From: Macrostomum lignano
Taxonomy: Eukaryota
Length of the DNA: 64,000 bases
Assembly: GCA_002269645.1 (NCBI GenBank)
Contig: NIVC01000020.1
Coordinates: 1,240,001 to 1,304,000 of the forward strand
Direction of reading: 5' to 3'
Both the position numbers and the translations under genes were made by a program. Below are positions 26,117 through 58,551 of this stretch, piece after piece. Each line of letters begins with the position of its first letter. The first letter of the stretch is position 1. The notes beneath the pieces are model-generated. The model saw nothing but the letters and a program-made list of their open reading frames with translations, was not told the DNA's origin and did not search any database.

Positions 26117-26482
26117 CTGCACCGCGCCGCGGCCTGGAGTCAGTTTTGCGGGGTTTAACTGTGCTGATGCCTGCAGCCTCATTTATTTACCTTGGAAACC
26201 TGAAAGCCTGACAGATTTTACTATTCTGCGAGATCAGCTCACCACCCTCTGAGCTGCGCGATACAGCCGGGTGGAAAATTCCACACCTCAAGTCAGAGAG
26301 CCGGCAAACTTAGCGAATTGGCTACATTTTGATTCCTGCCCGGCATGAAACCTGCGCCACACAGGCCGTCTGCGCTCACCCAAGTCGAGGCTTCCAAGTT
26401 TTTTTGCGTCGTTAAGCAGCGCCATTTCCCCAAAAATGTCTCCGGAGAAAAACTGCATGAAGATAATTGATTTGCCACTCAC

Positions 26483-30552: not shown

Positions 30553-32197
30553 CGAACCGCGTCACTTCAGTCTCCTCGTCGGCTTCGTCAAGCTCCTCCT
30601 CAGTCTCAATGAGCTGGCTGCCCCGCAGGCTGTTGTCGCCGCTGCCACCGCGGCCCTCCGTCACCGTGGCGAACGACTCGCAGCTCTCCCTGGCCGTGTA
30701 GAAGGTGGACGCCGAGTCGCTCTGCAGGCCGCCGCTCTGCAGCTCCTCGGCACTGCGCGCCGCTCTCAGGCGGCTCTCCTGGTCAGCAGCGGCTGCAGTG
30801 GCAGCTGCCGTGGCTGAGCTGAAGTCCGGGTTGCTCTTGCGAATCTCCTGCATCTCGATGTCCCGCTGGATGGCGGAGCCGCGCAGCGCCACCTCCTCCT
30901 CCTCTGTCTCCATTGGGCTGGCGTACTTCTCCTCGATTTTTGCAGCCGGCAGCCACGCGTCCTCGTCGTCCTCCTCCTCATCCTCATCTTCCGAGCTGCT
31001 GATCTCATCGGAGCTCTCCTCCAGGATGGGAAACAGACAGCGGCTGCTGCCGATCATCTGGCTGCTGGCCCTGAGAATGTCGTGGATGCTCTGGTACTCG
31101 AAGCTCGGCTGGTCGTACGAGGCGTCTTTCTCGTACGTGTTGATGATGAAGTCCGAGATGTCGCTCTCTTCGTCCTCGCTGGACTCGTCCGGCGACCCCG
31201 GCGGCGCGTCCGTCTCCTCCGACGCCGCCGCAGTTCCAGCCGTCGATGCCGGCTCCACCGGCTTTGGCAGCGGCGGCAGCGGGGGCGGACGCGACGGCAG
31301 CTGCTGTGGCTGGCCGCTCCGAGCTTTGATCTTCAGCAGGATGTCGCGCGTCTTGTCGCTGAACTCCGGGTAGTAGGCGGCGTCCTGCTGCGTTGCGTTG
31401 GCGTCGCCGCCGCCGCTGCAGAATGTTGAAGTCCCCCAGAGACCGCCGCCGCCGTAGACTCCGGTGTCGTGCGAGTCGAGCGGCTCCAGCGAGTCCCGGT
31501 CCATGGCAACGGCCCGCGAGCCGGTGGGGTCGCTCTGGGTCCGGTCCTCCGGGTGCGGCCGGTGCCTCAGCGCAATCTGCAGCCCGTCCTCGTGGTATTC
31601 CTCGGTGAAGTTAGCGTCCAGATCGTCCGCCCCCGACATGGCCAAGCTGTTGCTGGTGATGGAGATGCCCGCGCCGGCTCTCTGCAGCTTCTCCAGGTGC
31701 AGATCGTCCGTGGAGCCCCTGCCGGAGTGGTGCTGCTGCGGGGAGTCGCCCTCCGTGTCCAGAATTCTGGCCAGCGCTGTGAAGTCCGACTTCACGGAGG
31801 TCATGAGGTCCTCGATGCTCGAGGCTCCATCCGGTGGCTGCCGCGGCTGCGACCACAACGGCGGCTGCGCAACGGCGCTTCGGGTTCCGACGCGACTCTT
31901 TAATGGCGAGTAGAAGGCCCCGTCTGCGGCCTCGCCGTCCAGACTGTCCGAGTCCGACAGGCTCTCATCGCGGAACTCGCGACACTCGTCTTGACTGGGC
32001 GACTCGAGAGACATCGGCTGCGGATACTGCTGCTGCTGCTGAAGCTGCTCGCCGGGCAGCTGGAGGTTCGAGTTGATGCTCAGCATGTCCCGCTTGACCT
32101 CGCTGAGCGCAGTTTCCAGGGAGCTGTAGCGCTCGTCCCGCAGCTGCGCCATTCTGTCCAGGTCAGCACCGTCAGCTGGCGGGACCTCCGCCGACAT
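30553..32197 (-). CDS. Large acidic low-complexity first coding exon (548 codons); possibly the 5' exon of the AJM1-like gene, or a separate gene
   Basis: ATG at 32197, short N-terminal coiled-coil-like stretch (LETALSEVKRDML), strong GTGAGT donor at 30552, GC-rich coding bias. No domain recognised. Confidence 0.6.
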
Positions 32198-40348: not shown

Positions 40349-42583
40349 TTTCAATAGACGCCTGTTTTCCTTCGTCAGTTGGATTTGCCGCTTGCTCCAC
40401 ACTTTATGAGCGCCAACGAGCAGTAAGTGCAAGCTTACCTGGCATTGTCATAAGCTCGTATAACATTTTAGGCCTTGACATAAATACGCACTGGGTCGGT
40501 CGCATACTGCAGCGTACAGCAAGCTGTACCAAATTTGCGTACATCATTTTTCATAGGCCAGTGTACACTCAAGCGGGAAGACTTAGCTCTATCTACGCAT
40601 TTGCTAGTGCGCATAGATCTCACTGAACCTGTTTTAACAAGGTACTATAAAAACTATAAAAAGCAAATTTTCTCGAAGCAAATATTTTTCTATATTTTTT
40701 ATGGCCGCTTAAATTGATATTTCTTAATTTATTGGGGAAGAAAAAATCAGAAATTAGAACAACGGTTAAACCTTTCTAGGAGCAGGGTTGAAAAAACCTG
40801 ACGAACAGAGATTTAGGGAGGATGCACAGTATCGTACGCTCGTATATATAGAGTGTACTCAGAGGACAAGCAGCAGTTTTTCAATGTCTGCGACTAATTT
40901 CTCTGTTTGGTTTGCTATAATTATACAGTTTACTCTGAGTGCGCAAAATTTAATTTATTCTTATAAACATTTACCGACCGGATGCCGCCCGGTACATGTA
41001 ATGGTATATCATGATAGGCTGTCCTGCAGAGTCTCAGTTTGAAAGTTATTCGATTTCAAGACGTAAATCAGCAAAATAGGCCAGGGGCTTCTCAGAATAA
41101 GAATTAGCACCGGCAACAGTACATGCATGACAGCTGAGAGGCCGTGGGTACAGCTAGGCGATATGAGAATGAAAATTGTCGTTGAGCATAGTAGGCGCTG
41201 AACTTTTTTTCGTTAAACAATACTTTTCTTCGACGTCCGTCTGTGCTGTAGATCGCAGTATCCACAGCTATGGATTTGAGGTGGCCTTGAAGTTTCTCAG
41301 CTGGTCCTTTGGCTCGGCGCTCACCTCTAGCTCTTTTTTATGTCAGGCCGCGCGTTTCATTATCTAAAAGCCGGTTTGAGAAGTCAGGTTAACATCAGGT
41401 TATTGATGCAGTCCACTCGGGCCCGATGTCAGTCCGACGTTCCCAGCTCTCACTATGACTACTGATGCAGCTAGTGTTCGTTCTCTGTTGGGAGGCCGTT
41501 GCTTCGCCCCTGTTTCTTTGCCAACCGCGGGTTCTCGTGGTGTTCCTCTCCGGCTCCGGGCTGAGTACTAAAGCCAATATTGCATAAACACACGTTTGCA
41601 TACATTTATTATCGCTTCGTTCACCAGTGATTGGATGGCTCGATTATGCGTGTGAACGAGTCTTAAGCCGTTAAAAATCTAAACAAACTTATGCATGCTA
41701 ATAGAAGCAGTAAGCGGCTAAAATAAATTTATGGACTTTCGAGTCCTGAGAAAATGACTTTTGGTTCGAAGAATAGGATTTCCTTTTGAATGAAGGTTCA
41801 CTCTTGTGCGTCAGCGTGCATTGGCGTGTGTACTATTGTACTAATGCCTTCTCAGCCTAACTAGCACGAGCCAAGTTATCCGTGCATGAGTCATAGCTTG
41901 ATTAGGATACAAATGACTAATGAGTCACGACAAATCGGCTTTGTTTTCTTTGTTTCTTACTACAGTCTACAATGTCAGCGTTTCATTTTTCTTAACAGCC
42001 AAATATTGGCGATTTATTGGCAATTCTGAGTCAAGGTTAAAAAGGGAAAGAAAGTGTTTTTTATTTAGAAATCCCTTTTGACTTTTAGTCTAATTGGAAT
42101 TGGAATTGTATCATTATCTATATAAATAAGCCCAAAAACTCATTTCTCGGCTGACTATGTACTAGCTAGGCTAGGCATGGCATAGGTTAAACTTACTGCA
42201 TAGTAATTTAATTACTAGGCTTCGGCAATATGCCTAGGGATTCGTTATTCATTTAGTTCATTAGGCTTACATTTAATATTTAATAATATGGGTGCCTAGA
42301 CTAGAGCTAGACAGTGTAGTGTAGACTTACTATTTGTATTTATATATTATATGCCTATTGCCTATTTTATTTAAAGACAACACTACCAATATTGGAATAG
42401 ACTTGATTTTTATATGATTAGATAATTAGATAGGCCCTATAACTTTCAATGGTAATAATACTAGGGCCTAACACTTATAGTAATAGCTAGGCTAGTATAG
42501 CTATCTTAAGATTATTACTTAAGATAGTAATAGCTATCTTAAATCAGTTTATATTTTTAAATATTGTATAAAATAAATTTAAT

Positions 42584-42767
42584 CAGGGGTGGCAGAGCCT
42601 AATATTTGAGAGGGGACACTGGGCACAGGGCAAGGGGGGTACATGTACCTTTATAAGCTGCTAATTAGGACCTAAAATCAGAAAAAAACACTAAAAATTA
42701 CCACGTGGACTCATTTTCTGGGGGGGGGAGCACATGCCCCCAGTGCCACAAGCTCCCGCCGCCCATG
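42584..42767. mobile_element. Short hAT-like MITE (184 bp)
   Basis: Termini CAGGGGTGGC and (reverse complement) CATGGGCGGC match 8/10; flanks AATTTAAT and ATTATAAT resemble a decayed 8-bp TSD; GC-rich island within AT-rich DNA. Confidence 0.55.
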
Positions 42768-43207
42768 ATTATAATAGGCCCCTAGTGGTTAAAGTGTTAG
42801 ATTTACAGTTAGTAAGCTAAAAAGTCAGTTTGTTTCCAAATTTCATTTTTAAGTTTGTGTTTTTAATTATTTTTTTGTTTTTAAATTATTCAATTTTTGT
42901 TTGGACATGCACCTAGCATGATCTAGACTATGGCACCAAATAAGATATAATAACTAGTGCAATGTAAAATGGCTAGCTACAAAAAGGCCTATTAATATCT
43001 AGGCACAACAGTTAGTGTATACTCACATAAGTTTATAAAAAAATCAATTACCTATTTGTTGCTAGACATTGCTGCTACTATATCCCTAGTATTATCTAAA
43101 GGGCATGTTAAGCATGCTACATGACCATTAGTTTGCAATAAGATGGTAAATTGCCATCTAGTTAACAATGTCTCAAGATATTGCTATAATAGTAGCAAGC
43201 TCCTAAA

Positions 43208-43957
43208 GGCTCATTCTATATAAGCATGGTCGTAACATGACAGGCTATTTTTACTTATAAAATGAAATATAATAATAGAATATACTAAACCAATATTTTA
43301 AATGAAAGATAATTTTGTCAAAAATATTTTTATAGAGTTTCATGTAGATATCATCATTAGTATAGATGCTATTAAACCTTGAATGGCACTTATGGTCGTA
43401 ACAACAGGATTTTTGACATATAGAAACTAAAAGGTAAAAGTCTTATAACATTTTTATTTTTGATATTTTGCAATACATTTTTTAAAATTTGACAAAGAAC
43501 ATCTTTAGTAATCATACTCTTTTTGTAGAATATATAAACTCAAAAAGGCAACAAAGATACAAAAGAAAAGGCAGCCTTATGGTCGTAACATTATGGTTGT
43601 AACATATTTTTTTCTGTCAATTCAGTAACTTTGAGGTACCAATATATTAAAAATATAATAGATTATTTGGTCACCAATACTTTTATCTGATGATGCAAGT
43701 ACTATACTTTTATCTATAGTTTGTTTCAACCTTCCAAAGCTTTCTATTTGTTTTTAAAAGGTACACAAACTTAATGATGTCTTTTGCTTAGAAAAATGTC
43801 TAAATGTCTAAATGTCTATATCAGCCATTTATTCTTAGATTGTAGATATTACACATAAAAAACATTTGGTAAAAAAATTGGCTGATAAGGCAATGGCAAG
43901 GAAAAATATTGACTTTTTTCTATTTTCCAAAAATGTCCATCTTATATGGAATGAGCC
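43208..43957. mobile_element. Non-autonomous TIR DNA transposon (750 bp)
   Basis: TIR GGCTCATTC(T/C)ATATAAG(C)ATGG at both ends, flanked on both sides by TAAA; internal repeated ATGGTCGTAACA motif; no ORF. Confidence 0.7.
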
Positions 43958-44008
43958 TAAATATTAAAATGAAAGTTGCGTAACTCTAGGATAAGACACC
44001 TTTATCTA

Positions 44009-44124
44009 GGACTGGGTTTTTTGTGCAAATGGGTGCAAACAGCATCCTGGTCTTGAAAATCGTACCCTGAAATTTGACTCAGGGTATGAAAAGTGCACCC
44101 AAGTTATGGACAAAAACCCAGGCC
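44009..44124. mobile_element. Tiny MITE-like inverted-repeat element (~116 bp)
   Basis: GGACTGGGTTTTTTGT ... ACAAAAACCCAGGCC, flanked by TA on both sides. Confidence 0.5.
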
Positions 44125-44879
44125 TAGGAAGTATAATAAATATAGGTGCTGCTAGGTGACTAGCCATAAGTTATACTTATAATAATTTGACTCTGGTATG
44201 GTTAAAGAACTTAGCTAAATTGATTTGAAAGTGGTCTTTCGGTATAAAAGTTATATATTCTTATCATTCCTAATCTTCCTTTGAGTCTCTATATTGTTTT
44301 AGTCTACCTAGCTATACTCCTTAGTCCTTAGTATATTATACTAAAATTCCTTAGACTAAAAAGCTATATATAGCTTTTAGATATGCCATGCAATAGCTAA
44401 GCTATTAGTTGGGTTGCACATATGGCCTGAATAGGTTAAATATAATTGCTATAGCTATAGGCCAAGCTAATGTCACCCTATAGATAATTAATATGCCTCC
44501 TAGTGTTCCATGCACTTTAGTAGTCTAAAAGAAGAAAGCAATGCATGCAAATAAAATAAGAAAGATTAGAAAAAATGATCTTCTATAGCCAACCATTGGT
44601 TGGTTTGTTTAAGAGTTGTCAATAAGAACAAAAGACAACAATTAATAATTGATTATGAAATATTATTATAGTTATTATTAATATTAAAAAATGATTTTAT
44701 ATCATTTTTGATATTCAATGAATTGATAAAAATAGGAAAAACAACCTAAAAAGAATATCATTCCTTATAAGTTTATAAAAATATTTTAGAAAAAAATAGT
44801 TTTTACTAATTTTATTTTTAGTTTAAACTTAGCAAGATATAAACTGCTAATCCTGCTAATCCAAATAATATAATTTTGC

Positions 44880-45459
44880 ATAGATTTATAGTGGCAACTC
44901 TCTTCTTCACTATCTTCTTTATAGAAGTCAACAAGTTAACAAAATTTCGAAATCATAGCTGACAAATGGGTAATTGGCTACAGTGAATACTGCAAAATGA
45001 TTGCAGTAAATGATTGCTAAGACCCACAAGCCTATAAATGTTGAGTTATGAATCTCAGCTTAATTGTGCCTTGTTTTTCAAAGGGTATAAATCATACTCC
45101 TGAGCAACACAAATGTATATTCATGAGTTTTAGTGTAGCCAAAAGGAGGGAACAAAAAGTAGTAAAGTTAAACCCAGTTTGAAATATTCTGTTGCTTTAA
45201 AATTTATATGCTTCTCTAAGTTTTTCCATAGATATCTCTGTCATAGTAGCCTAACCAAGAATTTCAAGTGCATTCAATCAAAAGGACTTTTGCTACTTTT
45301 TGCTAGCTTATTGACTTACTATAATACTATAAGTCTATAGTTGAGCTCTTGTTACATTTTAGTTTAAAATATTTATAACTTTTGTTTCCATTCTCCGTTT
45401 TTAATAATGTCAAAGAGTAATACAAGCTATAAAGAAGAGAGTTGCTGCTATAAATCTGT
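44880..45459. mobile_element. TIR-bounded element (~580 bp)
   Basis: Left AGATTTATAGTGGCAACTCTCTTC versus right reverse complement AGATTTATAGCAGCAACTCTCTTC (22/24). No clear TSD. Confidence 0.5.
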
Positions 45460-46581
45460 GTAACAATGTTATTTGTACCATCAGAATAAAAGATATAATG
45501 AAAAGTAACACTACTTTTGGGATAGCCCTTGCCCCTTTATAGAATATTTTAATATTAAGAGTTACTTTCAATGTTTCTTCCATAAATAATGTTTGATAGA
45601 GTTTTAATGAATAAGAACTCCTATTTCAGTTTGACTTATTAACATTATTATAGCTAGATTCTAATCAAATAGCTAGAATTTAATTTTGTCTCATTTTTGT
45701 TTCATTTAATAGTTCCAAATTCTGACAGAAAGTATCCACATTAACACTGAAGCAATTTGTGCACAGAGATTCGACAAGTGTGTTTTAGTCTGTCTAAGGT
45801 TAGCTCTTGCACAGTGTAGACTAGTGTAGTTTATCTATTGAAGACCAAAATTAGCATTGACAAATAGGTGCTGTCAAGCTGAAATAGCCATATCCTTACA
45901 CTGAAAAGCCAACCCCAATTGAAGGCTTTGGGTTTCAATAATTTTTGCTTGTGTTTTGCTGCAACAATAAAACTAGACCAATTGCTTTTGGCATTTGGTA
46001 TGCCCAGCTGCCCACTGTTTACAAGCTGGTCATTGCTAAAATTAAGGCTCTGTTGCATTTTTGCACCTCTCTTAAGCCTGCTGGAATTAGCGCTGTTTCG
46101 TTTAGTGTCAGCCCCCCTCCACCTGGCTGCTGTGTATGTTATTGGAGTTTCCAATCAGCAGTTTGCCATCTTGGCCCGGTGCTATTAATAAGCACGCCAC
46201 CATCTCACTTGCTCTCAGTTGAATTCTGTTTATATCAGCAGCCGCCCCCGGCTCCGTGCGTCCTCTGCCTGGCACAAATTAAACCCGATCGATAACCCCC
46301 CCTCCCCCTAATTTAGTTGATTTGCGCGCCACAGCAGTCCGCTCTGATTTTATCCGCCGGCCGTGGGAGTGAAATATTTTCATATTATTTAGCTCGTTGC
46401 CCTCCCCCCCCCAGGGGCGCTGGCTCGTGCCAGCAATTAGTCTTGTACTCCGTTTATTCCCTCTCGCTCTGCGCCGCGGGTTGGGGTGGGCGCCGCGGAG
46501 GTTGGGGTGGCTGTGCTGAGTGTACATCCGATTCTCGCCAGCCGCCCGGTCCCACTGCGCCGTTGTTCTGTTTAGTGCGTG

Positions 46582-46743: not shown

Positions 46744-47154
46744 ATGTCTTGGGACTCCTGGGTGTCGAACCTCCTTCAGTATCCTGGCGTCAACTTCGGC
46801 GCCATCTGCGGCAACGACGGCAGCGTGTGGGCCAAGTCCGAGAACTTCGTCGCCTCGCCCGAGGAGCTGCAGGCCCTGGCCGCCGGGATCGGCAAGAACA
46901 ACGCCGGCGAGTTCCAGTCCTTCAAGCTGAACGGCGAGAAGTTCATGACTATCCGGCTGTTGAACCGCGAGCTGGACGCCAAGAAGCTGCAGTCCAGCGT
47001 GACTGTGATGGGCTGCACCCAGTGCTTTGTGATCGGCGGCTACATTGCCTCGTCCGAGGGCTCCGGCGAGCCCAATATGGGTACCGGCGGCGGTCAGAAG
47101 GTGAACGTGGCCGTGTCCAAGCTGAAGGACAGCCTCGTGGCCAGCGGCTACTGA
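46744..47154 (+). CDS. Profilin, single coding exon, 136 aa
   Basis: MSWDSWVSNLL...GAICGNDGSVWAKS...FKLNGEKFMTIR...LKDSLVASGY shows the profilin N-terminal and C-terminal signatures. Confidence 0.95.
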   Translation: MSWDSWVSNLLQYPGVNFGAICGNDGSVWAKSENFVASPEELQALAAGIGKNNAGEFQSFKLNGEKFMTIRLLNRELDAKKLQSSVTVMGCTQCFVIGGYIASSEGSGEPNMGTGGGQKVNVAVSKLKDSLVASGY

Positions 47155-49164: not shown

Positions 49165-49472
49165 ACTGGGTGAATAGAGCTGAGCACTCTGGGGTGAATG
49201 GAGCTGAGCACTCTGGGGTGAATAGAGCTTAGCGGGGTGAATGGAGCTGAGCACTCTGGGGTGAATAGAGCTTAGCGGGGTGAATGAAGCTGAGCACTCT
49301 GGGGTGAATGGAGCTGAGCACTCTGGGGTGAATGGAGCTGAGCACTCTGGGGTGAATGGAGCTGAGCACTCTGGGGTGAATGGAACTGAGCACTCTGGGG
49401 TGAATGGAGCTGAGCACTCTGGGGTGAATGGAGCTGAGCACTCTGAGGTGAATGGAGCTTAGCACTCGGGGT
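49165..49472. repeat. 24-bp minisatellite (~12 units)
   Basis: GAGCTGAGCACTCTGGGGTGAATG. Confidence 0.95.
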
Positions 49473-49954
49473 GAAGATTCTCTTATTTTGGTAATTTACC
49501 TGCCCATTTCCCCCATGCAGTTCAAGAAAGTAAAACACTCGACAGTCGCTAGTGAGTTGCCATGCAACTGGTCGACTGGTCGACTGGTTCAGTGGCAATA
49601 CACACTGCTACTACACGTAGAGACAGAGCGAGTTATGCATGCGGCGCGGTTTCTTTCTAGGAATTCAGCTCACATTAAGTTCGCATTACAACTGCCCTAA
49701 AAAAACCATTAATTTGCTCAATCCAGTTAGAGCACTGTACATGCAAAGCGAGTGCATTATGCAGGCCTCTCTGTCCCCGGCCTTCTCTCTTTCCCTGCAT
49801 GCACACCGCTGATTGCCCAGCCCGTGTTCAGCATTGTTCTATTTATAGAAAGAAGCATTGCACTGCCAGCTCAGTCCCTCCACGCTGGCAGCCAAACCGG
49901 GCATTTATTGTGCCACCCTTGCATTTGGCATAACCAGTTTGCACCTGCGCCGAG

Positions 49955-51371
49955 ATGAAGCCGGCAACTCCTGCAGTGCACCAGCAGTCCGGCCTGCGCC
50001 TCCGCTCCTCGGTGAACCTCTGGCTGGTGGCGTTACGCCTTGCTTGCCTGGCCGGCCTTCTGGCCACCTCCGTGTGCCTCAGCTGGTGGACACCTGTGCT
50101 GGCCGGGGCGCTGGCCCTCAGCTATCGATGGTCCGCCACCCGCCTCGCTGCCGTGGACCCCGAAGATGAGTCAGCGAACCTTCAGAAGAAGCATCGCTGG
50201 AAGAATCCGCTGCGCGGGAAGCCGATCTCCGGGTCCTTGACCGACCTGCCCGAGCCGAGGCTGCTGGAGCTCCAAACGGCCGCCCTCAGCGACACGCTTG
50301 CTGACGGCGCTGATGACACTGACACCGTTGACGACTGCCAAGCGCTGCGTGCCTTTGAGCCCGTCCGGCGGGGCACCGCGTGCGCGTTCGCCCGGCGCGC
50401 GCGGCTCTGGGGCGGCCCGGCCTGGCGGCCTCGCTTGCCGCTGGCCGCCAACGCAGCCGCCTGTGCGCCCCGGCTGCGCCTTTTCTGCCGCGTCTGCGCC
50501 GAGCTCGGGCTCGACGGCTTCGTCATCCGCCTGGTCGGCAAGCACCTGTGCCGCGACTTTCGACGCTTCAGCGCTGCCGTGTACGGCACGCTGAGCACCC
50601 TGGCCGCCTGCAACACCGGCGGCGGCGGGGACTGCATGGCCGAGCCGCACCGCCTGCACCAGACGGGTTGGGTGTTCCGCTTCCACGGACAGACCTTCTT
50701 TGTCACCACCTTCGCACCCTTCTACGGCCCGGAGGACAGCAGATTCGCTTTTGGCGCATCTGATGGGTGAGTTGCTTCCCCGTTGCCCTGGCTGATCCCC
50801 TTGTGCCCTGGCTCCTCTGGTGCCCTGGCTCCCCTGGTGCCCAGGCTCCCCCGGTGCCCTGGTTCCCCTGGCTCCCCCGTTCCCTGGTTCCCCTGGCTCC
50901 CCCAGTGCCCTGGCTCCCCCGTGCCCTGGCTCCCCCGTGCCCTGGCTCCCCCTGTGCACTGGCTCCCCTGGTCATTCTAACAGCTCTGATACCAAAATGA
51001 CGTTCCATTCTCCGCACAGGTGATACTCATGTACAATCCCCCTTCAACTGAACTCGCGCAGGTTTCTTCTGCTGCAGCCCGAGCTGTCCTTCGCCCAGCA
51101 CGACCTGCCGCCGGACACGCCGCATACAAACTGGGGCGGCGCCGAAGAGGGCGACGGTCATCAGACGGTTCGCGACCGGATTCGCTGCGCCTTCAGGGAC
51201 GCGGGCCAGGCCTACCGGATCCGGGATACGACCGTGTACCCTATGATAGAGGACATCGTCATGCCGCCGAAGTCTATGGGATCAGCCGACCTACCCGAAG
51301 GCAGCAGGTGGTGGGAGGTCGGCCTGGCAGCTGAAAACGAGGGCGAGAAATCGACAGACGACTTACAGTGA
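49955..51371 (+). CDS. N-terminally membrane-anchored YqcI/YcgG-like protein, 2 exons: 49955-50766, 51062-51371 (~373 aa)
   Basis: Hydrophobic N-terminal segments; CAFARRARLWG; GWVFRFHGQTFFVTTFAPFYGPEDSRF. The phase-2 junction GG|GTGAGT...GCGCAG|G gives FLLLQPELSF...VRDRIRCAF. The CDS is well supported; the family call comes from remembered motifs. Confidence 0.7.
50780..50975. repeat. C-rich degenerate repeat in the YqcI-like intron
   Basis: CCCTGGCTCCCC(C/T)GTG-type units. Confidence 0.88.
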
Positions 51372-54300
51372 AGGCGACCCACAATCTGCATTTGGTGTTT
51401 TGGGAAACACATGATAGAGGCAAATTTTACTGGTTGCTGCATGTAAATAAATGTGCGTGCGCCTTCAATGGAAGCCTTGTACAGTTTAAATATTTCACTT
51501 GAAACCATATGCAATTTTGGCCTTCATTCATCAGACTATTCTTCTCAATATGCCATAATTCTGCTATTCATTGAAAAGTGTTCAAAGTGTCGACTTTTAT
51601 GTACACATAAAATCTGTCATTGAAAGCTGTAATACACTGCACCACGTGCATAAATGTATCTACACCAGAATTTTTTTTAATGTTTTACATGTTACAATTA
51701 TGTACATGCATGTAATAATTGGACTAAAATGTGATACATGTAAGTCAAATTGCTATGTACATTTCGATCGAGGCACATACTCGTACGCTCGTATTGAGCA
51801 TTCACATTGTTTACTTGTAGTTTGGACAAAAATTGATATAAAAATTCGCGTATAGTACGGTAGCGTTTTATACAAGTCATTTGTTCTTTAAGTTTGTCCT
51901 GGCAATAAATTTGCCGCTAGTTGCATGTATAATCAATTATCAATCAGTCATCAATCAATCAGCTGGTAGCAAAAATCGAAATGGATCAAATGGCTGTGAA
52001 TCCAGTTTTGGGTCGTCTAATTAACCAGCCTTAATTGATTTGTTTTGTTTATTGACTAAATTCAAGGCCTGGGGCACTATATTTGGGTAATAAGCGTACA
52101 CGATCGACACTCGATTCAGCCATATACTATGTACAAATTTCATGTGCATAAGTCCCATATTTAACACGAATTAGCTTCACTATACTTTTTAAATTTTCCT
52201 TTAGGTAAAATTGAGCCTCACCTGAAACATCGCAGTAGAAAATAGAATTACATTCTTCATCCTTCATTCTTTTTATAGAATTCATTCTTCACGTCTCGAG
52301 GAAACGATAGTGATACGATATTATACATGTTATGCGTCAATAACACTCAGATATATAGTGTGGGGTGTTATTGTAACAAAAGGTGCCCAGCTCCCAAAGA
52401 AGCTAGAGAAAGCAGTAAGTCGACCAGAAAAGGGAGTCGCTCACGCGGGAGAGTTACAAAGCCTCCAAATCAAACGCAAAAAGCAACAAAGTAACATGTA
52501 CAGGAAAATATAAGCGTAAGACGAAGTAAAACAAGCCTCAGGCCCAGAAGACGGCAACCAAATGCGACAAACTTGTAAAAGTAGAAGTCACAATACGAGC
52601 GTAGAGGTAGAAGTAGAAAGAAGTGTTTTTTTGAGAATCTGTAATAGTACAATGACGACTATGACGGTGTGAAGTGAATTGCGTTTGTTTTAATTTTACA
52701 TGCTTCATGTAATATTTCAAGTTGTAGAAATGTTTCGTCTCGGGCCTGATCGGCGGACCTCGGTCTTGAAGTGAGGCTTTCTATCTTTTAAGACTTTGAA
52801 CTTGAAATTAATATTGATCTTAGATTGCTTAGATTAGATTGGATTGGATTGTATAGTAATATCAATTTTGTAATTTTGCGTGCATCAATAAAGACAATAT
52901 ACCATGGAAGTTTCGGGCTTTGTGCTTGTGCCATGTGTGGCATAGTGCTTATTTATTAGATCTGTATGTGTCGTAAAACGTGCTTGGATTTTAAGTAAAT
53001 TCTACGACTACCACTATTCTGAATGATGACTGTCCTATATAATATATAAAATAATATCTATATATATATCTATATCATATTTATTTTTAAAAATTATAGA
53101 AGTTATAGCATTTTTGTAATCAACCCAAGTTAAATTAAAGTGTTTCAACTTTATAATTTAGTGCTGTCAAGCAACTGCTCTGGCATAAATGAAGTTATAT
53201 TCATGAAACTACATCCATTTCAATTTGGCACTAAATAGAGGGGTGTATCCATAGATTGTTTTGTTGGTCACCCCCTTTAATGAATGACATCCTGAAAAAT
53301 CACTGAAAATGCCCCTCTGCCTTCCCCTAAAAAAATTCAGGTTGTGCTATTGTTGGTGTGCAGACATTTTGCAAACACCCCAACAAAAAGACTGAAAAAA
53401 AATTAATTTAGTTGCATTATTATAAAGCCTGTTTTTCATAACCAAGCTTTATAAATCCTGAAAAAAATTATAAAAATGATAGACCTATCATTTTTATAAG
53501 TGTTATTAGGCCTACTTGTCATTGTCATAAAAGGGCCTAATATTTAAAAGAAATATGATAACCTATAAATGTATAATACATTTTAAAAAACTCTATTAAT
53601 AAGGTTATTGACATTGTAAATTATCTAGTCAATATTAGACAAATATGCATTTTAATAATATCTATCCAATCAAATTGATAGTACTAATTATGTAAATAAA
53701 TATTTTTGGACTTCAAAGACTTCTTACTCAAATATTGATTATTATAAAAATTATGTTATTATATTATTGATAGATGTCTTATTCTATTATTATACTAAAA
53801 TTAATTTTTTACTTAATTAAAGAATTTTTTAGCAAATGTAGGCAAGTATATATATATAATTATATATAAACGTGCTTTGCTTACACTAATATAACAAAAT
53901 ATGAATTTTGATATAAGAAAAGGTCTTGTATTCAAGAAAAGGAAAAAAAGAAAATAGACACTTGTGTCTTGTGAAGTTATGTTAGCAATTTAACTGGATA
54001 AATAACAAAAATGGCTATTTGTCCAATTTAGTTTATGGCTATTCATTAATTTAGTATTAATTGGTAATAGATATTTGTCTAATAACTAGAATAATAATAA
54101 TTATTTGAAAGAAAGAAATTATTTGAAAGAAAAAATCTTTCAAATAAGATGCAATAAAGATTAAAATATTAAAATACAAATGGTTATATTCTTTTTAAGA
54201 AATCATTTTATTACAATAACAGTTTATAGCCTAAAGTACTACTTTTAAAAACATTTAAAATTCAAAACAGCTAGCTATAAACAATAACATTTTATTGTTT

Positions 54301-55507
54301 ATTGTCTCTAACTATATATAGGCCCTATAAAAAAGCAAAAAAGCATTAATTTTTGGCTTCTAAATCTATATGCAATTTAATGTTAAAAGTTGTTATGTAT
54401 ATACTTGATATATGTTAAAAATTGTTATATTTATATATATTTCTGTAAAAATATATTTAGACTAATTTTCTTTTTCTATATAAACCATGCATGCATCTTA
54501 CTAATAATGAATAAAGATTTTTCAAATCTGCAAACTTAATGCAAATTTTATAAAAAAAACATTGATACATAAGTAAAGTACAAATTTATAAACAAAGCCA
54601 TAAAATACTAAGTCAAAAGATAGTCTTAGATAAGTCTTAAAAGCCCTAATCAACTAATTAGTTTTAGGAAAAACAAAAAAACAATAAGTGTGACAATTTT
54701 TATGATTGCACTTTTTTGCAGACATGTCATACCCTTGATAGTTGGAAGCTAGGCAATGATGCCACCCCAACAGACTTAGCAGCCATGCAGCACTCAGAAA
54801 CTTAGTTTGGCCTCTACAGCAGATAACAGGCTTAAAATTGGGTGTATGTGGCAAAATAATTTTAAGGTGGTAGAACTGCAACTTTACACTGGGCTGCCAA
54901 AAGCTATCACATCTCTTCAAGGAGCACCTATGAATCTGGCAAAAATAATTCCATTAGCATTGCATTTAACATTTTTTCTATATGGGATATTTAAAATATT
55001 TGGGCCAATGCAGGTACTTGCATGACAATGCTAATCGGGGACTTCACTTTGCTAGACTAACAGGAAAAGTGACACTCTTCAGTCTACAATGACCATTCTT
55101 AAGCTGTTTCCTGACAAATTGGATTTAATACATTTAGTGTCAATCTTAATTTTGCTTTTCTGCCAATTAACTACTTGATGCTAGTCAAAGCAGACTGAAA
55201 TGCGTTGTGTTAAAAAATTAATAAAGAAAACAAACATTGAGGCTATTTAAAGGTTATTTGGTTAGGCATTTATCCCATGCCTCATTATATAAAAGGCTAT
55301 GTAAAATGACATGCCAGATTTGAGTAGAGATGCTTTGATGAATTTTTGGCAGAGGCAATAAATTATCAAGAAAAGAAATTGGTTTGCATTTAGTTTTAGA
55401 TAAATAAATGTCATATTTAATGCAGTTTTCATATTTATAAACTATTCCAATACAGTGGATTGAGTTCAATGACTAAAATTCATTTGTTTTTGCAGTTATC
55501 AGAAGAA

Positions 55508-58500
55508 ATGAGCAATGAAGATGCATTGGATCTGTATGCCGACATCTGCACCAACAATGGGCCATCCTATGAGGTGAGTTGAAAGCATTTGGTAGCACTC
55601 AGCTGTCCCAGTTCAGCTCATTGTTTCCCCCCGACTTCCATGGCAGGATCTGCGAGCTCGCTGCCACACCCTCGAGCAGGAGACCAAGCAGCTGGTTGAG
55701 ACCATCAGCACCCTGGCCAGTGAAAACAAGGCTCTGCTGGCTGACAAGGCCAGCCTGAACCAGCTGCTCGCCCAGCAGCGGGACCACTACGAGAGGAAGC
55801 TGAAGTTCCTCAACGACAGGTTTGTTTTAATTGAATGCTTGAATCTGAGTATATCCAATTCAATGCCCTCAGTATCCCATCAGTAGGCTGGAATAACTGT
55901 AGATTGAAATGCTGCCGCAGATTCAATCAATTAGCGGTGCGCTCCATTTTAGTAAGAGGAGTTGAGGAGTTCTCCCTATTCTAATTTGGCATACTCCGCA
56001 CTCCGGAACTCCCGACACATCCCGCAGGTACCAGCGACTGGCCGCTGCCGGCAGCTCTGCAAAAGAGGCCGCGACATCCGGTGTGCAGCAGCCGAGCGGC
56101 CTCGCCGCCCCGCCAGCATCTGCGACGCCGCGCAAGCGGCGCCGATCGTCAGACAGTCGGGACCGGACGGTCTCGAAGCCGAGGTGCCGGCGGCAGACGG
56201 AATCGCCGGAGCGCCGGGACCGGCAGCGCGGCCGCCACTCGGGCGGGCGCCGCAACGGCAGTCGGTCCCCTCAGCGGCCGGCGCCAGCAGCCGGGGCTCT
56301 CGCTGACGGATTCGACTGCCGGCCGTTCAACGGGCCGAAGACGCCGCCGTCTCCGGAGCCGGCGGACGACGAGCCTTCTTTGCAGGGTGCGGCCAGAGCG
56401 GAGGGCGGCGCCTCAGCTTCGGTCCTGCGCCGATCGCCGAGTCCGAGTGCCAAGAGGCTGAGCTCGTCTGTGGAGCGGCGAGAGCGCCGCCGTGACGATC
56501 GCGCCAACCGGCAGGCGGCCGGGGCGCGCAGGGAGGCGGCGCCGGGAAGCGCGCGCCACCCAAAGGAGCGCCAGTCGGCGACTTCGTGGAGACGGCAGCG
56601 CTACCAGGAAATCCAGGTCAAGCAGCAGCAGCGCCGGCAGGGGCTTGCGGACCGCGAGCGCAAGGATCGGCCAGGTGGACGCGGCGAAGGCGACCGCCGT
56701 CCCAGATCGCCTCCGGCCCCTTCCAGCGCTCGGGGCGATAGCAAAGAGAAATATTCAAAAAATATTAATAATATAAAAAGTCGTGAAGCTGGATCGTCAC
56801 AACAGCCAAAAGTACAGCTGACAAGTCCGCATCAGCCGTCAGTTCAGCTGACAAGTCCGCATCAGCCGTCAGCTCAGCTGACAAGTCCGCATCAGCCGTC
56901 AGCTCAGCTGGCAAGTCCGCATCAGCCGTCAGCTCAGCTGGCAAGTCCGCATCAGCCGTCAGCTCAGCTGACAAGTCCGCATCAGCCGTCAGCTCAGCTG
57001 ACAAGTCCGCATCAGCCGTCAGCTCAGCTGGCAAGTCCGTATCAGCCGTCAGCTCAGCTGGCAAGTCCGCATCAGCCGTCAGCTCAGCTGACAAGTCCGC
57101 ATCAGCCGTCAGCTCAGCTGACAAGTCCGCATCAGCCGTCAGCTCAGCTGACAAGTCCGCATCAGCCGTCAGCTCAGCTGACAAGTCCGCAGTCTCTGTC
57201 CACCTCATCGAGCCTTGTCAGTCCCGGCGACAGCAGCTGCGGCAAGAAGGCAGCGCCACCCAGTCAGCGGAAGATCATCTTCAGCCTGCCCGATGCCTAC
57301 CGCACCCAACTGCCGCCCGTTGAAGTCGGCAGCGACGAGGATGCCGCCGTGAATGTCGAGCCAGTGGGAGCCGCTGCAGTCGCCGAGGCGCATCATCCAG
57401 ACGTCGCCGCCGAGGTTCGGGCAACGGATGCCTGCACGCTGATGCGAATGCACCGCTCGTGGGCCGCCAGGGAGGCCGTCAGACAGCAGCACCTGCGGGA
57501 AAACGAGGCCGCCGAAGTTGACAGCGGCGTCGGCTCGTCGCACCCGGACCAGGCGCACACGCCTGACGAGCCTTCGGTGTCCGAGGAGCCCGCGGGCGAG
57601 GCTCAGCCACCGCCACCGCCGGCCACCCCGACGCCAGCCGGTGCCGTCCCAGCCGAGCCCATCGAAGTCATCACAGACTGCGCGCCTGTGCAGCGCTGCG
57701 GGCCGCGCACGCCGCCATCGCCACCTCCGCCGACTCCGCCGCCTGTTGAGCTCGAGCTGAACTGCTCCAATGAGTTCGACGAGGAAGCTGCGGCTGAACC
57801 ACCAGCAAGCTCGGCTACGCTGGCTGCCGACTCCGTGCAGCGCGACAGGAGGTCGAAGTCGCGCGAATCAAGACGGTGCAAGGACTTCTCCGAGAGGCGC
57901 GAGGCGTCCTCGCAGCCCCGCTCATCCGAGACGTCTTCAAGCCAGCGGCATCGGCGCGAAATCTCTCGATCGCCGCTGCGATGCGGGGAATCCGGCCGCT
58001 CCGGCAGGCGCCGCTCCCGCCCAAGAGACGCTTCGCCGGCCTCAGCAGGCAGCTGTCGGTCGGGCTCGCGGGCCGCCGAGCCGCGGAATCATCGGGAGGC
58101 GACGCCGCCAAGACTGGCGAAGCGTCTGGCCAAGAAGCCGCCTGCCGCTCGAGTCAGCCACGATGTCGACTCTAAAGCCGAGGTTGCCGAGGAGGGCGAG
58201 ATTGTCAGCGATGAAGAGGGGATTCTGCGAGCGGGCACCTGCGATGAGGCAGCCAAGGACAGGGCGGCGGTTGACCGCGCCAAAAGCACGCAACGCCAGC
58301 AGCGAGCGCCGGAGCCAGTCCGGTCCGCTGTGTTCGCCAAGGCCGGCGCGGTCCTCAGCCGGCGAGCATCGCCCAAGCTGCAGCGCCGGCGTCGCTCCTC
58401 GGGTGATCACCGAAGCGAGGACGGAGCTTATTCGCAGCATCGTCAGCGGCAGCGTGGAGGCAGTCGGCACCGGCGAAGTCGATCAAAGTCCCCGTTGAAC

Positions 58501-58551
58501 CGACGTTCGCGACCCGCCTATGTCTGCACTGGCAGGAAGTGGCGCGCATAG
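55508..58551 (+). CDS. Possible FLASH/CASP8AP2-like protein: exons 55508(55496)-55573, 55647-55819, 56028-58551
   Basis: ALDLYADIC...PSYEDLRARC followed by a coiled coil (LASENKALL) resembles the FLASH N-terminus (LDLY motif + coiled coil). Splice phases 0 and 2 are consistent with the long Arg/Ser/Pro-rich ORF 56083-58551. The gene is well supported; its identity is moderate. Confidence 0.6.
56812..57190. repeat. 30-bp in-frame minisatellite (~13 units, QPSAQLTSPH)
   Basis: CAGCCGTCAGCTCAGCTGACAAGTCCGCAT; the reading frame stays open across it. Confidence 0.95.

What the first reader, a model, noticed from the sequence alone, without database searches (positions are those of the whole stretch)
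49955..51371. Intron-containing, membrane-anchored YqcI/YcgG-like protein, a mainly bacterial family, in an animal genome
Seen: an N-terminal hydrophobic anchor, a CAFA motif, WVFRFHGQTFFVTTFAPFY..DSRF, and after splicing LLQPE...RDRIR. Established (from memory): bacterial YqcI/YcgG proteins show CPF, W.F.F.G..FFV..P.Y...SR and FQP...R..IR motifs, and the family includes heme-dependent guanidino N-hydroxylases such as DcsA (D-cycloserine pathway). Inference: a domesticated horizontally acquired or patchily retained enzyme that could N-hydroxylate arginine-like substrates, perhaps at a membrane. The AT-rich flank is only circumstantial.
Basis: partly seen in the sequence, partly recalled or inferred. 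Interest (0 to 1): 0.7.

Follow-up and report, generated by a model that had tools for sequence, protein, structure and literature searches.

The report
Membrane-anchored YqcI/YcgG-like heme enzyme gene
A flatworm gene encodes a membrane-anchored relative of bacterial heme enzymes that add oxygen to arginine-type nitrogen atoms; it belongs to a large, unstudied eukaryotic branch of that family and looks anciently inherited rather than recently taken from bacteria.

Summary
Window 49955..51371 (+) holds a two-exon gene (GT..AG intron 50767..51061, phase 2). Its 373-aa product is identical to the annotated Macrostomum lignano hypothetical protein BOX15_Mlig006710g1.

The product has an N-terminal hydrophobic anchor and a C-terminal domain with the YqcI/YcgG (AglA) fold. 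In the PDB, Foldseek matches the AlphaFold model (pLDDT 90.7) only to AglA (TM 0.57-0.59). Pfam PF08892 scores just 17.7 bits for this protein, below the cut-off of 27, but some relatives pass.

Every AglA heme-site residue has an almost invariant counterpart across about 250 relatives: Cys143 (thiolate), Arg263/Arg308/Arg312 (propionates), Phe249, Phe281 and Gln276. AglA's substrate-binding Arg179 is Glu278 here, so the substrate is open.

The gene belongs to a large subfamily (924 clusters at 50% identity). Named members are spiralians, hemichordates and dinoflagellates, plus Kitasatospora. Members carry either a hydrophobic anchor or an Arf-like GTPase at the N-terminus.

Recent horizontal transfer is not supported:
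- Composition matches the neighbouring genes.
- The flanks are eukaryotic genes.
- A linker motif is found only in spiralians.
- Lingula and Saccoglossus share an intron.

Best reading: an ancient, patchily retained, membrane-tethered thiolate-heme N-oxygenase. It is a new variant of a known kind, and the biochemistry is untested.

The parts
49955..50766 (+). Exon 1 (codons 1-270 plus two bases of codon 271): N-terminal anchor, linker, and the first two thirds of the catalytic domain
   Evidence: Identical to annotated protein PAA93881.1. The same exon boundary is used in the second copy, L001.
50012..50125 (+). Codons 20-57: hydrophobic N-terminal anchor (VNLWLVALRLACLAGLLATSVCLSWWTPVLAGALALSY). 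Two short helices around a W-W-T-P turn; could be a hairpin or two-pass membrane anchor.
   Evidence: Hydropathy maximum 2.15. AlphaFold helices 15-41 and 46-66. A comparable hydrophobic segment is present in 62 of the 106 representatives whose N-terminus could be assessed.
50204..50245 (+). Codons 84-97: linker motif NPLRGKPISGSLTD, shared only with spiralian animal members
   Evidence: A regex scan of 258 family sequences found the motif in 21, all spiralian or clustering with them. Alignment.
50381..50383 (+). Codon TGC for Cys143 in the C-A-F-A motif: predicted proximal thiolate ligand of heme (equivalent of AglA Cys44)
   Evidence: Cys in 177 of 177 aligned relatives. In relatives it aligns to Pfam PF08892 profile position 12. 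It aligns to Cys49 of a Bacillus YqcI/YcgG protein, which aligns to AglA Cys44. Role of Cys44 from PMC12866846.
50669..50743 (+). Codons 239-263: core strand motif W-V-F-R-F-H-G-Q-T-F-F-V-T-T-F-A-P-F-Y-G-P-E-D-S-R, with Phe249 (= AglA Phe152) and Arg263 (= AglA Arg166, heme propionate)
   Evidence: Ungapped alignment to AglA 142-166 by hhalign and hmmsearch. W239 254/254, F249 255/255, R263 255/256.
50767..51061 (+). Spliceosomal intron, 295 nt, GT..AG, phase 2, inside codon Gly271; specific to the Macrostomum lineage
   Evidence: The same sites are used in copy L001, where the intron is 580 nt. No intron at this position in Lingula, Saccoglossus or Owenia.
50774..50972 (+). 17-bp minisatellite (about 11.6 copies, consensus GCTCCCCCGGTGCCCTG) that fills most of the intron
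   Evidence: Tandem Repeats Finder. The repeat matches L001 at multiple offsets and the L001 intron is 580 nt, so copy number probably explains the length difference.
51062..51371 (+). Exon 2 (last base of codon 271 to the TGA stop). Holds Gln276 (51075-51077), Glu278, Phe281 (51090-51092), the subfamily insert HDLPPDTPHTNW, Arg308 (51171-51173), Arg312 (51183-51185), Tyr322 and the C-terminal W354-W355.
   Evidence: Q276 257/257, F281 257/257, R308 252/254, R312 250/253. Q276 and F281 align to AglA Gln177 and Phe182. The R-x-x-I-R register against Lys196/Arg200 comes through the Bacillus protein.
51446..51451 (+). AATAAA, a candidate polyadenylation signal 75 nt after the stop codon
   Evidence: Pattern search only; no transcript end was examined.

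Best explanation
The locus is a functional nuclear gene of the flatworm Macrostomum lignano. It encodes a membrane-tethered enzyme of the YqcI/YcgG (AglA-type) heme-thiolate superfamily.

Shown:
- The gene model.
- The AglA-like fold of residues about 125-356.
- Near-absolute conservation of the residues that hold and flank heme in AglA: Cys143 = Cys44 thiolate; Arg263, Arg308 and Arg312 = Arg166, Lys196 and Arg200 propionate clamps; Phe249 and Phe281 = the gating Phe152 and Phe182; Gln276 = Gln177.
- Membership of a large, mainly eukaryotic subfamily whose N-terminus is either a hydrophobic anchor or an Arf-like GTPase.

Inferred:
- The protein binds heme b through Cys143.
- It sits on the cytosolic face of an endomembrane.
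- It receives electrons from a membrane-associated reductase system.
- It uses O2 to oxygenate a nitrogen atom of a small substrate, most likely a guanidino or related amine group, as its bacterial relatives do.

The substrate is probably not bound as in AglA. Arg179 is replaced by Glu278, and the subfamily has its own 12-residue insert and a C-terminal WW motif.

Evolution: the gene was most likely present in early bilaterians, and the subfamily earlier still in eukaryotes. It was kept in spiralians and hemichordates and lost elsewhere. It is not a recent bacterial import.
For: Gene and context
- The spliced product equals annotated PAA93881.1.
- A second collinear copy has identical splice sites. 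It differs by 7 synonymous and 9 non-synonymous changes, and none of the 9 lies in the conserved region after residue 200.
- Neighbours are eukaryotic genes: profilin, an ankyrin-repeat protein, a MYND-finger protein and a PIGO/PIGG-like gene.
- GC3 is 0.81, against 0.56-0.92 for the neighbours.

Fold
- Domain model: pLDDT 90.7, pTM 0.89.
- Foldseek against the PDB returns only the five AglA entries: probability 1.00, E 9e-4, TM 0.57/0.59, rmsd 4.7 A over 235 columns. The next hit has E 1.9. The full-length model gives the same result.

Sequence
- PF08892 hits 22 of 23 relatives at E<0.01. Four of ten relatives tested score above the 27-bit cut-off.
- A subfamily HMM hits a Bacillus protein annotated YqcI/YcgG from its Cys49 to its LQP motif: 28 bits, E 1e-10 with Z=2.
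- That Bacillus protein matches AglA at 4e-40.

Residues
- Residue roles in AglA come from PMC12866846.

Distribution and descent
- 924 clusters at 50% identity with E<=1e-3.
- Named members: molluscs, brachiopod, annelid, nemerteans, flatworm, hemichordates and dinoflagellates.
- The linker motif is found only in spiralians.
- Lingula and Saccoglossus share a phase-1 intron at ...LS(I/L)|E(H/E)N....

Membrane modules
- Of 106 assessable representatives, 62 have a hydrophobic N-terminus and 19 an Arf-like GTPase. Eight of the Arf-type proteins start MGxxxS.
Against: - The window protein itself scores only 17.7 bits on PF08892, below the cut-off of 27. It has no NCBIfam hit.
- Neither it nor profiles of its subfamily find AglA by sequence in the PDB.
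- hhalign against the single AglA sequence gives only 18% probability, over 53 columns.
- The R308/R312 to K196/R200 correspondence rests on motif register through a third sequence, not on a direct alignment.
- I could not read model coordinates, so I did not check that these residues surround a heme-sized pocket.
- AglA's Arg179 is Glu here.
- No heme binding, activity, localisation or redox partner was tested.
- Neighbour-joining trees do not place the Macrostomum sequence with other animals with any support (23-24% bootstrap).
- pN/pS between the two copies is 0.44 from only 16 differences, which is weak evidence.
Confidence: 0.7

Rival explanations
1. Recent horizontal transfer from a bacterium into the Macrostomum lineage, later domesticated by gaining an intron and an anchor.
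For: - PF08892 is mostly bacterial (2,602 species, per the supplement of PMC12866846).
- A bacterial member of this very subfamily exists in Kitasatospora (hhalign probability 99.9, E 7e-32).
- The Macrostomum sequence is a long, poorly placed branch in the NJ trees.
- The Macrostomum intron position is not shared with other animals.
Against: - The best matches are spiralian animals: 42-51% identity to gastropods, covering about 90% of the protein including the non-catalytic N-terminus. Identity to Kitasatospora is 31%.
- The anchor and the NP(L/F)(K/R)GKP..SL linker motif are shared only with spiralians.
- Base composition and GC3 match the neighbouring host genes.
- There are three annotated copies in the genome, and two were seen in collinear eukaryotic context.
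- The same AT-rich blocks flank unrelated genes and are collinear in the second contig.
Confidence: 0.05
2. The protein keeps the fold and binds heme but is not an N-hydroxylase. It could be a heme sensor, chaperone or transfer protein at a membrane, or it could catalyse a different oxidation on a non-guanidino substrate, such as a lipid or a protein side chain.
For: - The substrate-contacting Arg179 of AglA is Glu278 here, and that position varies within the subfamily: E 190, Y 19, M 15, T 15 of 257.
- The subfamily has its own insert (HDLPPDTPHTNW) and a WW C-terminus that AglA and the Bacillus protein lack.
- Membrane anchoring and Arf-GTPase fusions are unlike the soluble bacterial enzymes, which sit in biosynthetic gene clusters.
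- Only six members of the whole family have been characterised, all of them bacterial (PMC12866846).
Against: - Besides the heme ligands, the residues that position the guanidine in AglA are invariant here: Phe152/Phe182 and Gln177, equivalent to Phe249, Phe281 and Gln276. That is more than a pure heme carrier would need.
- Every characterised member of the family is a guanidine N-hydroxylase.
Confidence: 0.2
3. Assembly contamination, or a decaying pseudogene of no function.
For: It is annotated only as a 'hypothetical protein', and the Pfam score is weak.
Against: - It has a spliceosomal GT..AG intron and eukaryotic neighbours on the same contig.
- A second contig is collinear over more than 12 kb.
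- The reading frame is intact in both copies, and every subfamily-invariant residue is kept.
Confidence: 0.03

Closest known systems
AglA (also called AlpD) of Streptomyces monomycini, the argolaphos pathway enzyme; PDB 9UB3, 9UB5, 9UBT
   Same: - It is the only structural match in the PDB: TM 0.57-0.59, probability 1.00.
- Same order of motifs: the Cys motif; W-x-F-x-F-x-G-x-x-F-F-...-P-x-Y-...-S-R; Q-x-x-x-x-F; R/K-x-x-x-R.
- The counterparts of Cys44, Phe152, Arg166, Gln177, Phe182, Lys196 and Arg200 are all conserved.
   Different: - About 17-18% identity, and not detectable by pairwise or profile sequence search of the PDB.
- AglA is soluble, bacterial, cluster-encoded and works with a PDR/VanB reductase.
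- The flatworm protein has a 125-residue N-terminal anchor and linker, Glu instead of Arg179, a 12-residue insert before the R-D-R-I-R helix, and a WW C-terminus in place of AglA's loop L2.
DcsA (D-cycloserine pathway) and the other characterised guanidine N-hydroxylases of the family: Mhr24, ChmN, AmbT, GntA
   Same: Same Pfam family as AglA and the same predicted fold with cysteine ligation, according to PMC12866846. DcsA hydroxylates free L-arginine to N-omega-hydroxy-L-arginine (PMC8976061).
   Different: I named these proteins but did not fetch or compare them. All are bacterial, soluble and encoded in natural-product gene clusters. No eukaryotic member has been characterised.
Bacillus toyonensis plasmid protein WP_000236658.1, annotated 'YqcI/YcgG family protein'
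   Same: It bridges the two groups. It matches AglA at 4e-40. The flatworm subfamily HMM matches it from its Cys49 to its LQP motif at 28 bits. It carries PFPCYFA, W-E-F-C-F-A-G-E-P-I-F-V, S-R-Y, L-Q-P and V-R-K-V-I-R.
   Different: It has no membrane anchor, no subfamily insert and no WW motif. It has Arg after Q-P, as AglA has at 179. It lies between a YbaK/EbsC gene and a LysE transporter gene, near a P450 gene.
Kitasatospora sp. NBC_01300 homologue (plasmid NZ_CP108409.1 about 382304-382891, with a 99% identical chromosomal copy); uncharacterised
   Same: It is a clear member of the same divergent subfamily: hhalign probability 99.9, E 7e-32, 31% identity over 206 columns. It has F-x-P-I-R-R-G-S-x-C-P-F-A, L-D-G, F-A-P-C-Y-P, L-L-F-Q-P-x-x-S-F, V-R-E-R-I-R and W-W.
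   Different: It is bacterial, with no N-terminal anchor seen in the matched frame, and lacks most of the DTPxTNW insert. Like the flatworm protein, it misses PF08892 at E<0.01. It sits next to a P450, a dCTP-deaminase-like gene and a class II aminoacyl-tRNA-synthetase-like gene. Close relatives were found only in Kitasatospora.
Microsomal cytochrome P450 monooxygenases (analogy only)
   Same: A thiolate-ligated heme domain tethered to a membrane by an N-terminal hydrophobic segment. They would need an external reductase.
   Different: The fold is unrelated. There is no PF00067 hit even at E<=1, and AglA is described as a new structural class with no significant similarity to previously characterised heme enzymes (PMC12866846).

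Membership tests
Pfam PF08892 YqcI/YcgG | Whole-protein score at or above the curated gathering cut-off (27 bits) | tested here: not met
   The window protein scores 17.7 bits, E 0.0032, over residues 166-281. Relatives do better: 22 of 23 hit at E<0.01. P0044 scores 32.9, P0048 29.5, P0053 29.5 and P0056 27.2 bits. The subfamily therefore straddles the cut-off; this protein is below it.
YqcI/YcgG (AglA-type) superfamily | AglA 'sandwich' fold: a central beta-sheet with helices on both faces | tested here: met
   The AlphaFold2 domain model (pLDDT 90.7) matches only AglA entries in the PDB: probability 1.00, TM 0.57/0.59, rmsd 4.7 A over 235 columns. All other hits have E>1.
YqcI/YcgG (AglA-type) superfamily | Proximal cysteine (AglA Cys44) in the FPC/CPF-type motif as heme thiolate ligand | tested here: met
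   Sequence level only. Cys143 (T-A-C-A-F-A) is Cys in 177 of 177 relatives. In relatives the Pfam alignment starts at this Cys, at profile position 12. The subfamily HMM aligns it to Bacillus Cys49, which aligns to AglA Cys44. Actual ligation was not tested.
YqcI/YcgG (AglA-type) superfamily | Basic residues clamping the heme propionates (AglA Arg166, Lys196, Arg200) | tested here: met
   Arg263 aligns directly to Arg166. Arg308 and Arg312 correspond to Lys196 and Arg200 by the shared R/K-x-x-I/V-R register, seen through the Bacillus protein. Conservation: 255/256, 252/254 and 250/253. The second and third correspondences are indirect.
YqcI/YcgG (AglA-type) superfamily | Distal-pocket residues that position the guanidine (AglA Phe152, Gln177, Phe182) | tested here: met
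   Phe249, Gln276 and Phe281 align to them in hhalign. They are invariant in the subfamily: 255/255, 257/257 and 257/257.
AglA-like substrate binding | Arg179 and loop L2 residues (Ser221, Thr222, Lys225, Gln228) that bind the substrate backbone and phosphonate | tested here: not met
   The position aligned to Arg179 is Glu278. It is Glu in 190 of 257 relatives and otherwise Tyr, Met, Thr or Leu. The C-terminal region has a different, subfamily-specific sequence (Y-P-x-x-x-x-I-V-x-P...W-W) with no detectable alignment to loop L2.
Heme-dependent guanidine N-hydroxylases | Heme b binding and O2/reductant-dependent N-hydroxylation of a guanidino substrate | not testable with these tools
   This needs protein expression, spectroscopy and LC-MS assays. 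[quoted passage not shown]
Cytochrome P450 (PF00067) | P450 fold and Cys-pocket signature | tested here: not met
   No PF00067 hit at E<=1. No P450 structure appears among the Foldseek matches. The resemblance is functional only.

The most novel reading that the evidence does not exclude
Spiralian and hemichordate animals, together with many protists, have a membrane-tethered thiolate-heme enzyme unrelated to P450s and NO synthases. In protists it is often fused to an Arf-like GTPase. It N-hydroxylates a guanidino compound such as arginine, a methylarginine or a phosphagen precursor. That would give these organisms an NOS-independent route to N-hydroxyguanidines and possibly NO, or a new membrane-linked signalling or metabolic step switched by a GTPase.
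Probability: 0.2. Interest if true: 0.8.

Novelty: new variant of a known kind. Interest (0 to 1): 0.55.

Why it matters
The YqcI/YcgG enzymes are a recently described structural class of thiolate-heme N-oxygenases. So far they are known only from bacterial antibiotic and toxin pathways. The literature notes that the Pfam family also occurs in eukaryotes (PMC12866846). I found no paper that describes or characterises a eukaryotic member.

This locus shows three things:
- Animals carry an intact version that looks catalytically competent.
- It belongs to a large eukaryotic branch (hundreds of sequence clusters) that Pfam only half recognises.
- That branch is consistently tied to membranes, by a hydrophobic anchor or by an Arf-like GTPase.

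If the chemistry is conserved, this is an unrecognised nitrogen-oxygenating heme enzyme in animal and protist cell biology. It is directly testable in a flatworm with RNAi and transgenesis. It also gives enzyme engineers a new, divergent set of sequences. If the chemistry is not conserved, it is still a clean case of an old enzyme fold re-used at eukaryotic membranes.

Tried and rejected
Searches that gave nothing
- Sequence searches of the PDB never reached AglA. I tried the window protein, subfamily profiles A2 and A3, the relative with the best Pfam score, P0044, and the Kitasatospora protein. I obtained the AglA sequence only through a Bacillus YqcI/YcgG protein found by tblastn on plasmids.
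- NCBIfam: no hit.
- hhalign of the subfamily against the single AglA sequence aligned only the core motif, at 18% probability.
The single-protein scan found only Kitasatospora. The breadth of bacterial members is therefore unknown.
- Cluster look-ups gave no taxonomy for most unnamed relatives. Contig look-ups for P0018, P0022 and P0015 returned only anonymous metagenome or read-archive records.
- Literature searches for a described eukaryotic member, an Arf fusion, or the gene identifier found nothing.

Analyses that stayed inconclusive
- Neighbour-joining trees of 130 and 40 sequences did not resolve the deep branches or the position of Macrostomum. A first attempt timed out.

Ideas rejected
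- Bacterial contamination: there is an intron, eukaryotic neighbours and a collinear second copy.
- The AT-rich flank as a sign of a foreign island: such blocks occur elsewhere in the window and are collinear in the second copy.
- The long antisense ORFs 50171..50959 and 50182..50709: by-products of high G+C, with no support.
- A bacterial-type promoter or terminator around the gene: none above chance.
Full report
**1. What is at the coordinates**

The window has G+C-rich coding stretches alternating with AT-rich, ORF-poor blocks. At 49955 an ATG opens a reading frame that runs to 50766. A GT follows at 50767, and an AG at 51060-51061 restores the frame. The frame then ends at a TGA at 51369-51371.

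The spliced CDS is 1122 nt and gives 373 residues. That exact protein is in public databases as PAA93881.1, 'hypothetical protein BOX15_Mlig006710g1' of the flatworm Macrostomum lignano. Two further annotated copies exist, g2 and g3. The g2 copy lies on a contig that is collinear with the window from about 40.0 to 52.7 kb at 93-97% identity. It uses the same donor and acceptor. Its intron is 580 nt rather than 295 nt, apparently because a 17-bp minisatellite inside the intron has a different copy number.

The two coding sequences differ at 7 synonymous and 9 non-synonymous sites (pN/pS about 0.44). All amino-acid changes fall in residues 43-200, and none falls in the most conserved part. Homologues align through the exon junction without a gap.

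Neighbours in the window are ordinary eukaryotic genes:
- profilin at 46744..47154
- an ankyrin-repeat protein
- a MYND-finger protein
- a PIGO/PIGG-like gene

The gene's G+C (0.67) and GC3 (0.81) fall inside the range of those neighbours. The AT-rich flank says nothing about foreign origin.

**2. What the protein is**

Pfam gives only a sub-threshold hit to PF08892 (YqcI/YcgG): 17.7 bits against a cut-off of 27, over residues 166-281. NCBIfam gives nothing. The homology becomes convincing at the level of the family:
- 22 of 23 relatives hit PF08892 at E<0.01.
- Four of ten relatives tested exceed the cut-off. In those, the alignment to the Pfam profile begins exactly at the conserved cysteine.
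- An AlphaFold2 model of residues 123-373, built on 60 relatives, has pLDDT 90.7 and pTM 0.89.
- Foldseek against the PDB returns the five AglA entries and nothing else of significance. The best is 9UB3: probability 1.00, E 9e-4, TM 0.57/0.59, rmsd 4.7 A over 235 columns. The next hit has E 1.9. The full-length model gives the same answer.

AglA is the first solved YqcI/YcgG enzyme. It is a thiolate-heme guanidine N-hydroxylase with a fold unlike other heme enzymes (PMC12866846).

**3. Residue-level comparison**

That paper assigns these roles in AglA:
- Cys44 is the heme ligand.
- Arg166, Lys196 and Arg200 clamp the heme propionates.
- Phe152 and Phe182 sandwich the substrate side chain.
- Gln177 positions the guanidine through a water molecule.
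- Arg179 holds the substrate backbone.

No profile of the flatworm subfamily finds AglA by sequence in the PDB. I therefore reached its sequence indirectly. A tblastn of a relative against plasmids found Bacillus genes annotated 'YqcI/YcgG family protein'. One of these matches AglA at 4e-40, which displayed the AglA sequence.

An HMM of the flatworm subfamily aligns to the Bacillus protein from its Cys49 to its L-Q-P motif (28 bits, E 1e-10 for two targets). It aligns to AglA residues 139-166. hhalign aligns flatworm residues 234-291 to AglA 137-190. Together these give the following register.

| AglA residue | Flatworm residue | Basis |
|---|---|---|
| Cys44 | Cys143 | via Bacillus Cys49 |
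| Trp142 | Trp239 | direct |
| Phe152 | Phe249 | direct |
| Arg166 | Arg263 | direct |
| Gln177 | Gln276 | direct |
| Arg179 | Glu278 | direct |
| Phe182 | Phe281 | direct |
| Lys196 | Arg308 | shared R/K-x-x-I/V-R motif, indirect |
| Arg200 | Arg312 | shared R/K-x-x-I/V-R motif, indirect |

Across all subfamily sequences I held, these positions are essentially invariant:
- Cys143: 177/177
- Trp239: 254/254
- Phe249: 255/255
- Arg263: 255/256
- Gln276: 257/257
- Phe281: 257/257
- Arg308: 252/254
- Arg312: 250/253

Seven of the twelve invariant columns in a 67-sequence alignment are thus the known functional residues of AglA. The exception is informative. The Arg179 position is Glu in 190 of 257 sequences and otherwise variable. 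The subfamily also has its own insert (H-D-L-P-P-D-T-P-x-T-N-W) and a C-terminal W-W. The heme machinery and the guanidine-positioning residues are conserved, but substrate-backbone recognition is not.

**4. The N-terminus and the membrane**

Residues about 20-57 are strongly hydrophobic (maximum 2.15 on the Kyte-Doolittle scale). They are modelled as two helices, 15-41 and 46-66.

Among the 150 best cluster representatives:
- 62 have a comparably hydrophobic N-terminal segment.
- 19 instead have an N-terminal Arf-like GTPase domain. Pfam Arf E-values are 1e-32 to 1e-44 for those tested. Eight of the Arf-type proteins begin M-G-x-x-x-S.
- 44 are truncated.
- 25 have some other extension.

From general knowledge, M-G-x-x-x-S is the usual context for N-myristoylation. 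Two unrelated membrane-association modules in front of the same domain argue that the domain works at a membrane, on the cytosolic side. That topology, the identity of the membrane and the electron donor are inferences.

**5. Distribution and origin**

A profile search of 1.84 billion cluster representatives found 924 clusters at E<=1e-3 and 342 at E<=1e-30.

Named members:
- Mollusca: many gastropods and bivalves
- Brachiopoda: Lingula
- Annelida: Owenia
- Nemertea: Lineus, Tubulanus
- Platyhelminthes: Macrostomum
- Hemichordata: Saccoglossus, Ptychodera
- dinoflagellates: Symbiodinium, Effrenium, Polarella
- EukProt transcriptomes, many anonymous metagenome and read-archive sequences, and one nr record labelled Anoxybacillus

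No vertebrate, arthropod, nematode or cnidarian name appeared. The word-indexed searches are not exhaustive, so absence is not proven.

One clear bacterial member exists, in Kitasatospora. It is present on both the chromosome and a plasmid, and lies beside a P450, a dCTP-deaminase-like gene and a class II aminoacyl-tRNA-synthetase-like gene.

Evidence against a recent bacterial import into Macrostomum:
- The best matches are gastropods, brachiopod and annelid, covering about 90% of the protein including the non-catalytic N-terminus.
- A linker motif between anchor and domain occurs only in spiralian members. Compare N-P-L-R-G-K-P-I-S-G-S-L-T-D here with N-P-L-K-G-K-P-R-L-T-S-L-S-E in Littorina.
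- Lingula and Saccoglossus share a phase-1 intron at exactly the same aligned position, and probably a second one in the anchor. The gene was therefore already interrupted before protostomes and deuterostomes split.
- The composition is native.

Evidence that keeps the question partly open:
- The Macrostomum intron is lineage-specific, and Owenia has none.
- My neighbour-joining trees recover a mollusc, brachiopod and nemertean clade (100%), hemichordates (87%) and dinoflagellates (73%). They leave the long Macrostomum branch and all deep nodes unresolved.

**6. Mechanism, with degrees of belief**

| Statement | Belief | Status |
|---|---|---|
| Real gene with an AglA-type fold | about 0.95 | shown |
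| Binds heme through Cys143, with Arg263, Arg308 and Arg312 on the propionates | about 0.75 | inferred from conservation and alignment |
| O2-dependent N-oxygenation of a guanidino or related nitrogen, with electrons from a membrane-associated reductase | about 0.45 | inferred from the family's only known chemistry and from conserved Phe249, Phe281 and Gln276 |
| Free arginine is the substrate | about 0.2 | speculative |

The main rival is a heme-binding protein with a different substrate or a non-catalytic role (about 0.2). Recent horizontal transfer (about 0.05) and artefact or pseudogene (about 0.03) are unlikely.

**7. Comparison with what is known, and novelty**

The gene is already annotated, but only as 'hypothetical'. 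Pfam-based surveys note that YqcI/YcgG proteins occur in eukaryotes (PMC12866846). I found no description of a eukaryotic member, of the anchor, of the Arf fusions or of this subfamily.

By strict Pfam membership this protein fails the cut-off. By fold and active-site residues it belongs to the superfamily. By substrate-binding residues and architecture it differs from every characterised member. I rate it a new variant of a known kind, of moderate interest. It is worth a bench test, because a heme spectrum and a small substrate screen would settle most of the open points.

Noticed in passing
window 49168..49475: A 24-bp minisatellite (about 13 copies, consensus GGGTGAATGGAGCTGAGCACTCTG) lies 480-790 nt upstream of the start codon. 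The repeat region aligns at many offsets in the collinear second copy, so copy number probably differs.
   Followed up: partly
window 42001..46000 and 52001..56000: AT-rich blocks (G+C about 0.30-0.33) without long ORFs lie between G+C-rich genes. At least the upstream one is collinear in the second Macrostomum contig. They look like ordinary intergenic sequence, not a foreign island.
   Followed up: partly
window 46744..47154 (+): An intronless 136-aa profilin gene lies about 2.8 kb upstream of the YqcI/YcgG-like gene. The same arrangement is present in the second copy (L001 6560..6979).
   Followed up: partly
L002 about 5990..6705 (Kitasatospora sp. NBC_01300 plasmid NZ_CP108409.1); also L005, L006, L007: A bacterial member of the 'eukaryote-type' subfamily is present on both the plasmid and the chromosome (99% identical) and in two other Kitasatospora species. 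It is flanked by a cytochrome P450, a dCTP-deaminase-like gene and a class II aminoacyl-tRNA-synthetase-like gene. This may be an uncharacterised biosynthetic cluster. Which way any transfer went between bacteria and eukaryotes is unknown.
   Followed up: partly
relatives P0014, P0015, P0045, P0049, P0053, P0071, P0077, P0084, P0086, P0104 and others; L014 1462..2856: Nineteen of the 150 best family representatives are fusions of an N-terminal Arf-like GTPase with the YqcI/YcgG-like domain. Eight of the Arf-type proteins start M-G-x-x-x-S. The source organisms are unnamed (read-archive and metagenome assemblies). I found no paper describing this architecture.
   Followed up: partly
protein P0148 (nr): A 291-aa member of the subfamily is labelled 'YqcI/YcgG family protein [Anoxybacillus sp. 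EFIL]' in nr. In the 130-sequence tree it groups, with 92% and 80% bootstrap, with two unnamed representatives rather than with canonical bacterial YqcI/YcgG. It could be contamination of that assembly or a genuine bacterial member.
   Followed up: no
cluster mates P0209 and P0210 of the window protein: UniRef names two sequences of the same 90% cluster 'TLDc domain-containing protein'. Pfam found no such domain in the window protein. The name is probably propagated from an older or fused gene model.
   Followed up: no
L009 11308..11323 (Saccoglossus kowalevskii): Reconstructing the annotated Saccoglossus protein requires a 16-nt micro-exon between two introns. It may be real or an annotation artefact. 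The conserved phase-1 intron just before it does not depend on it.
   Followed up: no
window 21560..26182 (-), 30494..32197 (-), 56083..58551 (+): These are long single-exon ORFs of 1540, 567 and 822 aa with high GC3. The first has only a MYND finger. The other two have no Pfam match. They were not examined further.
   Followed up: no
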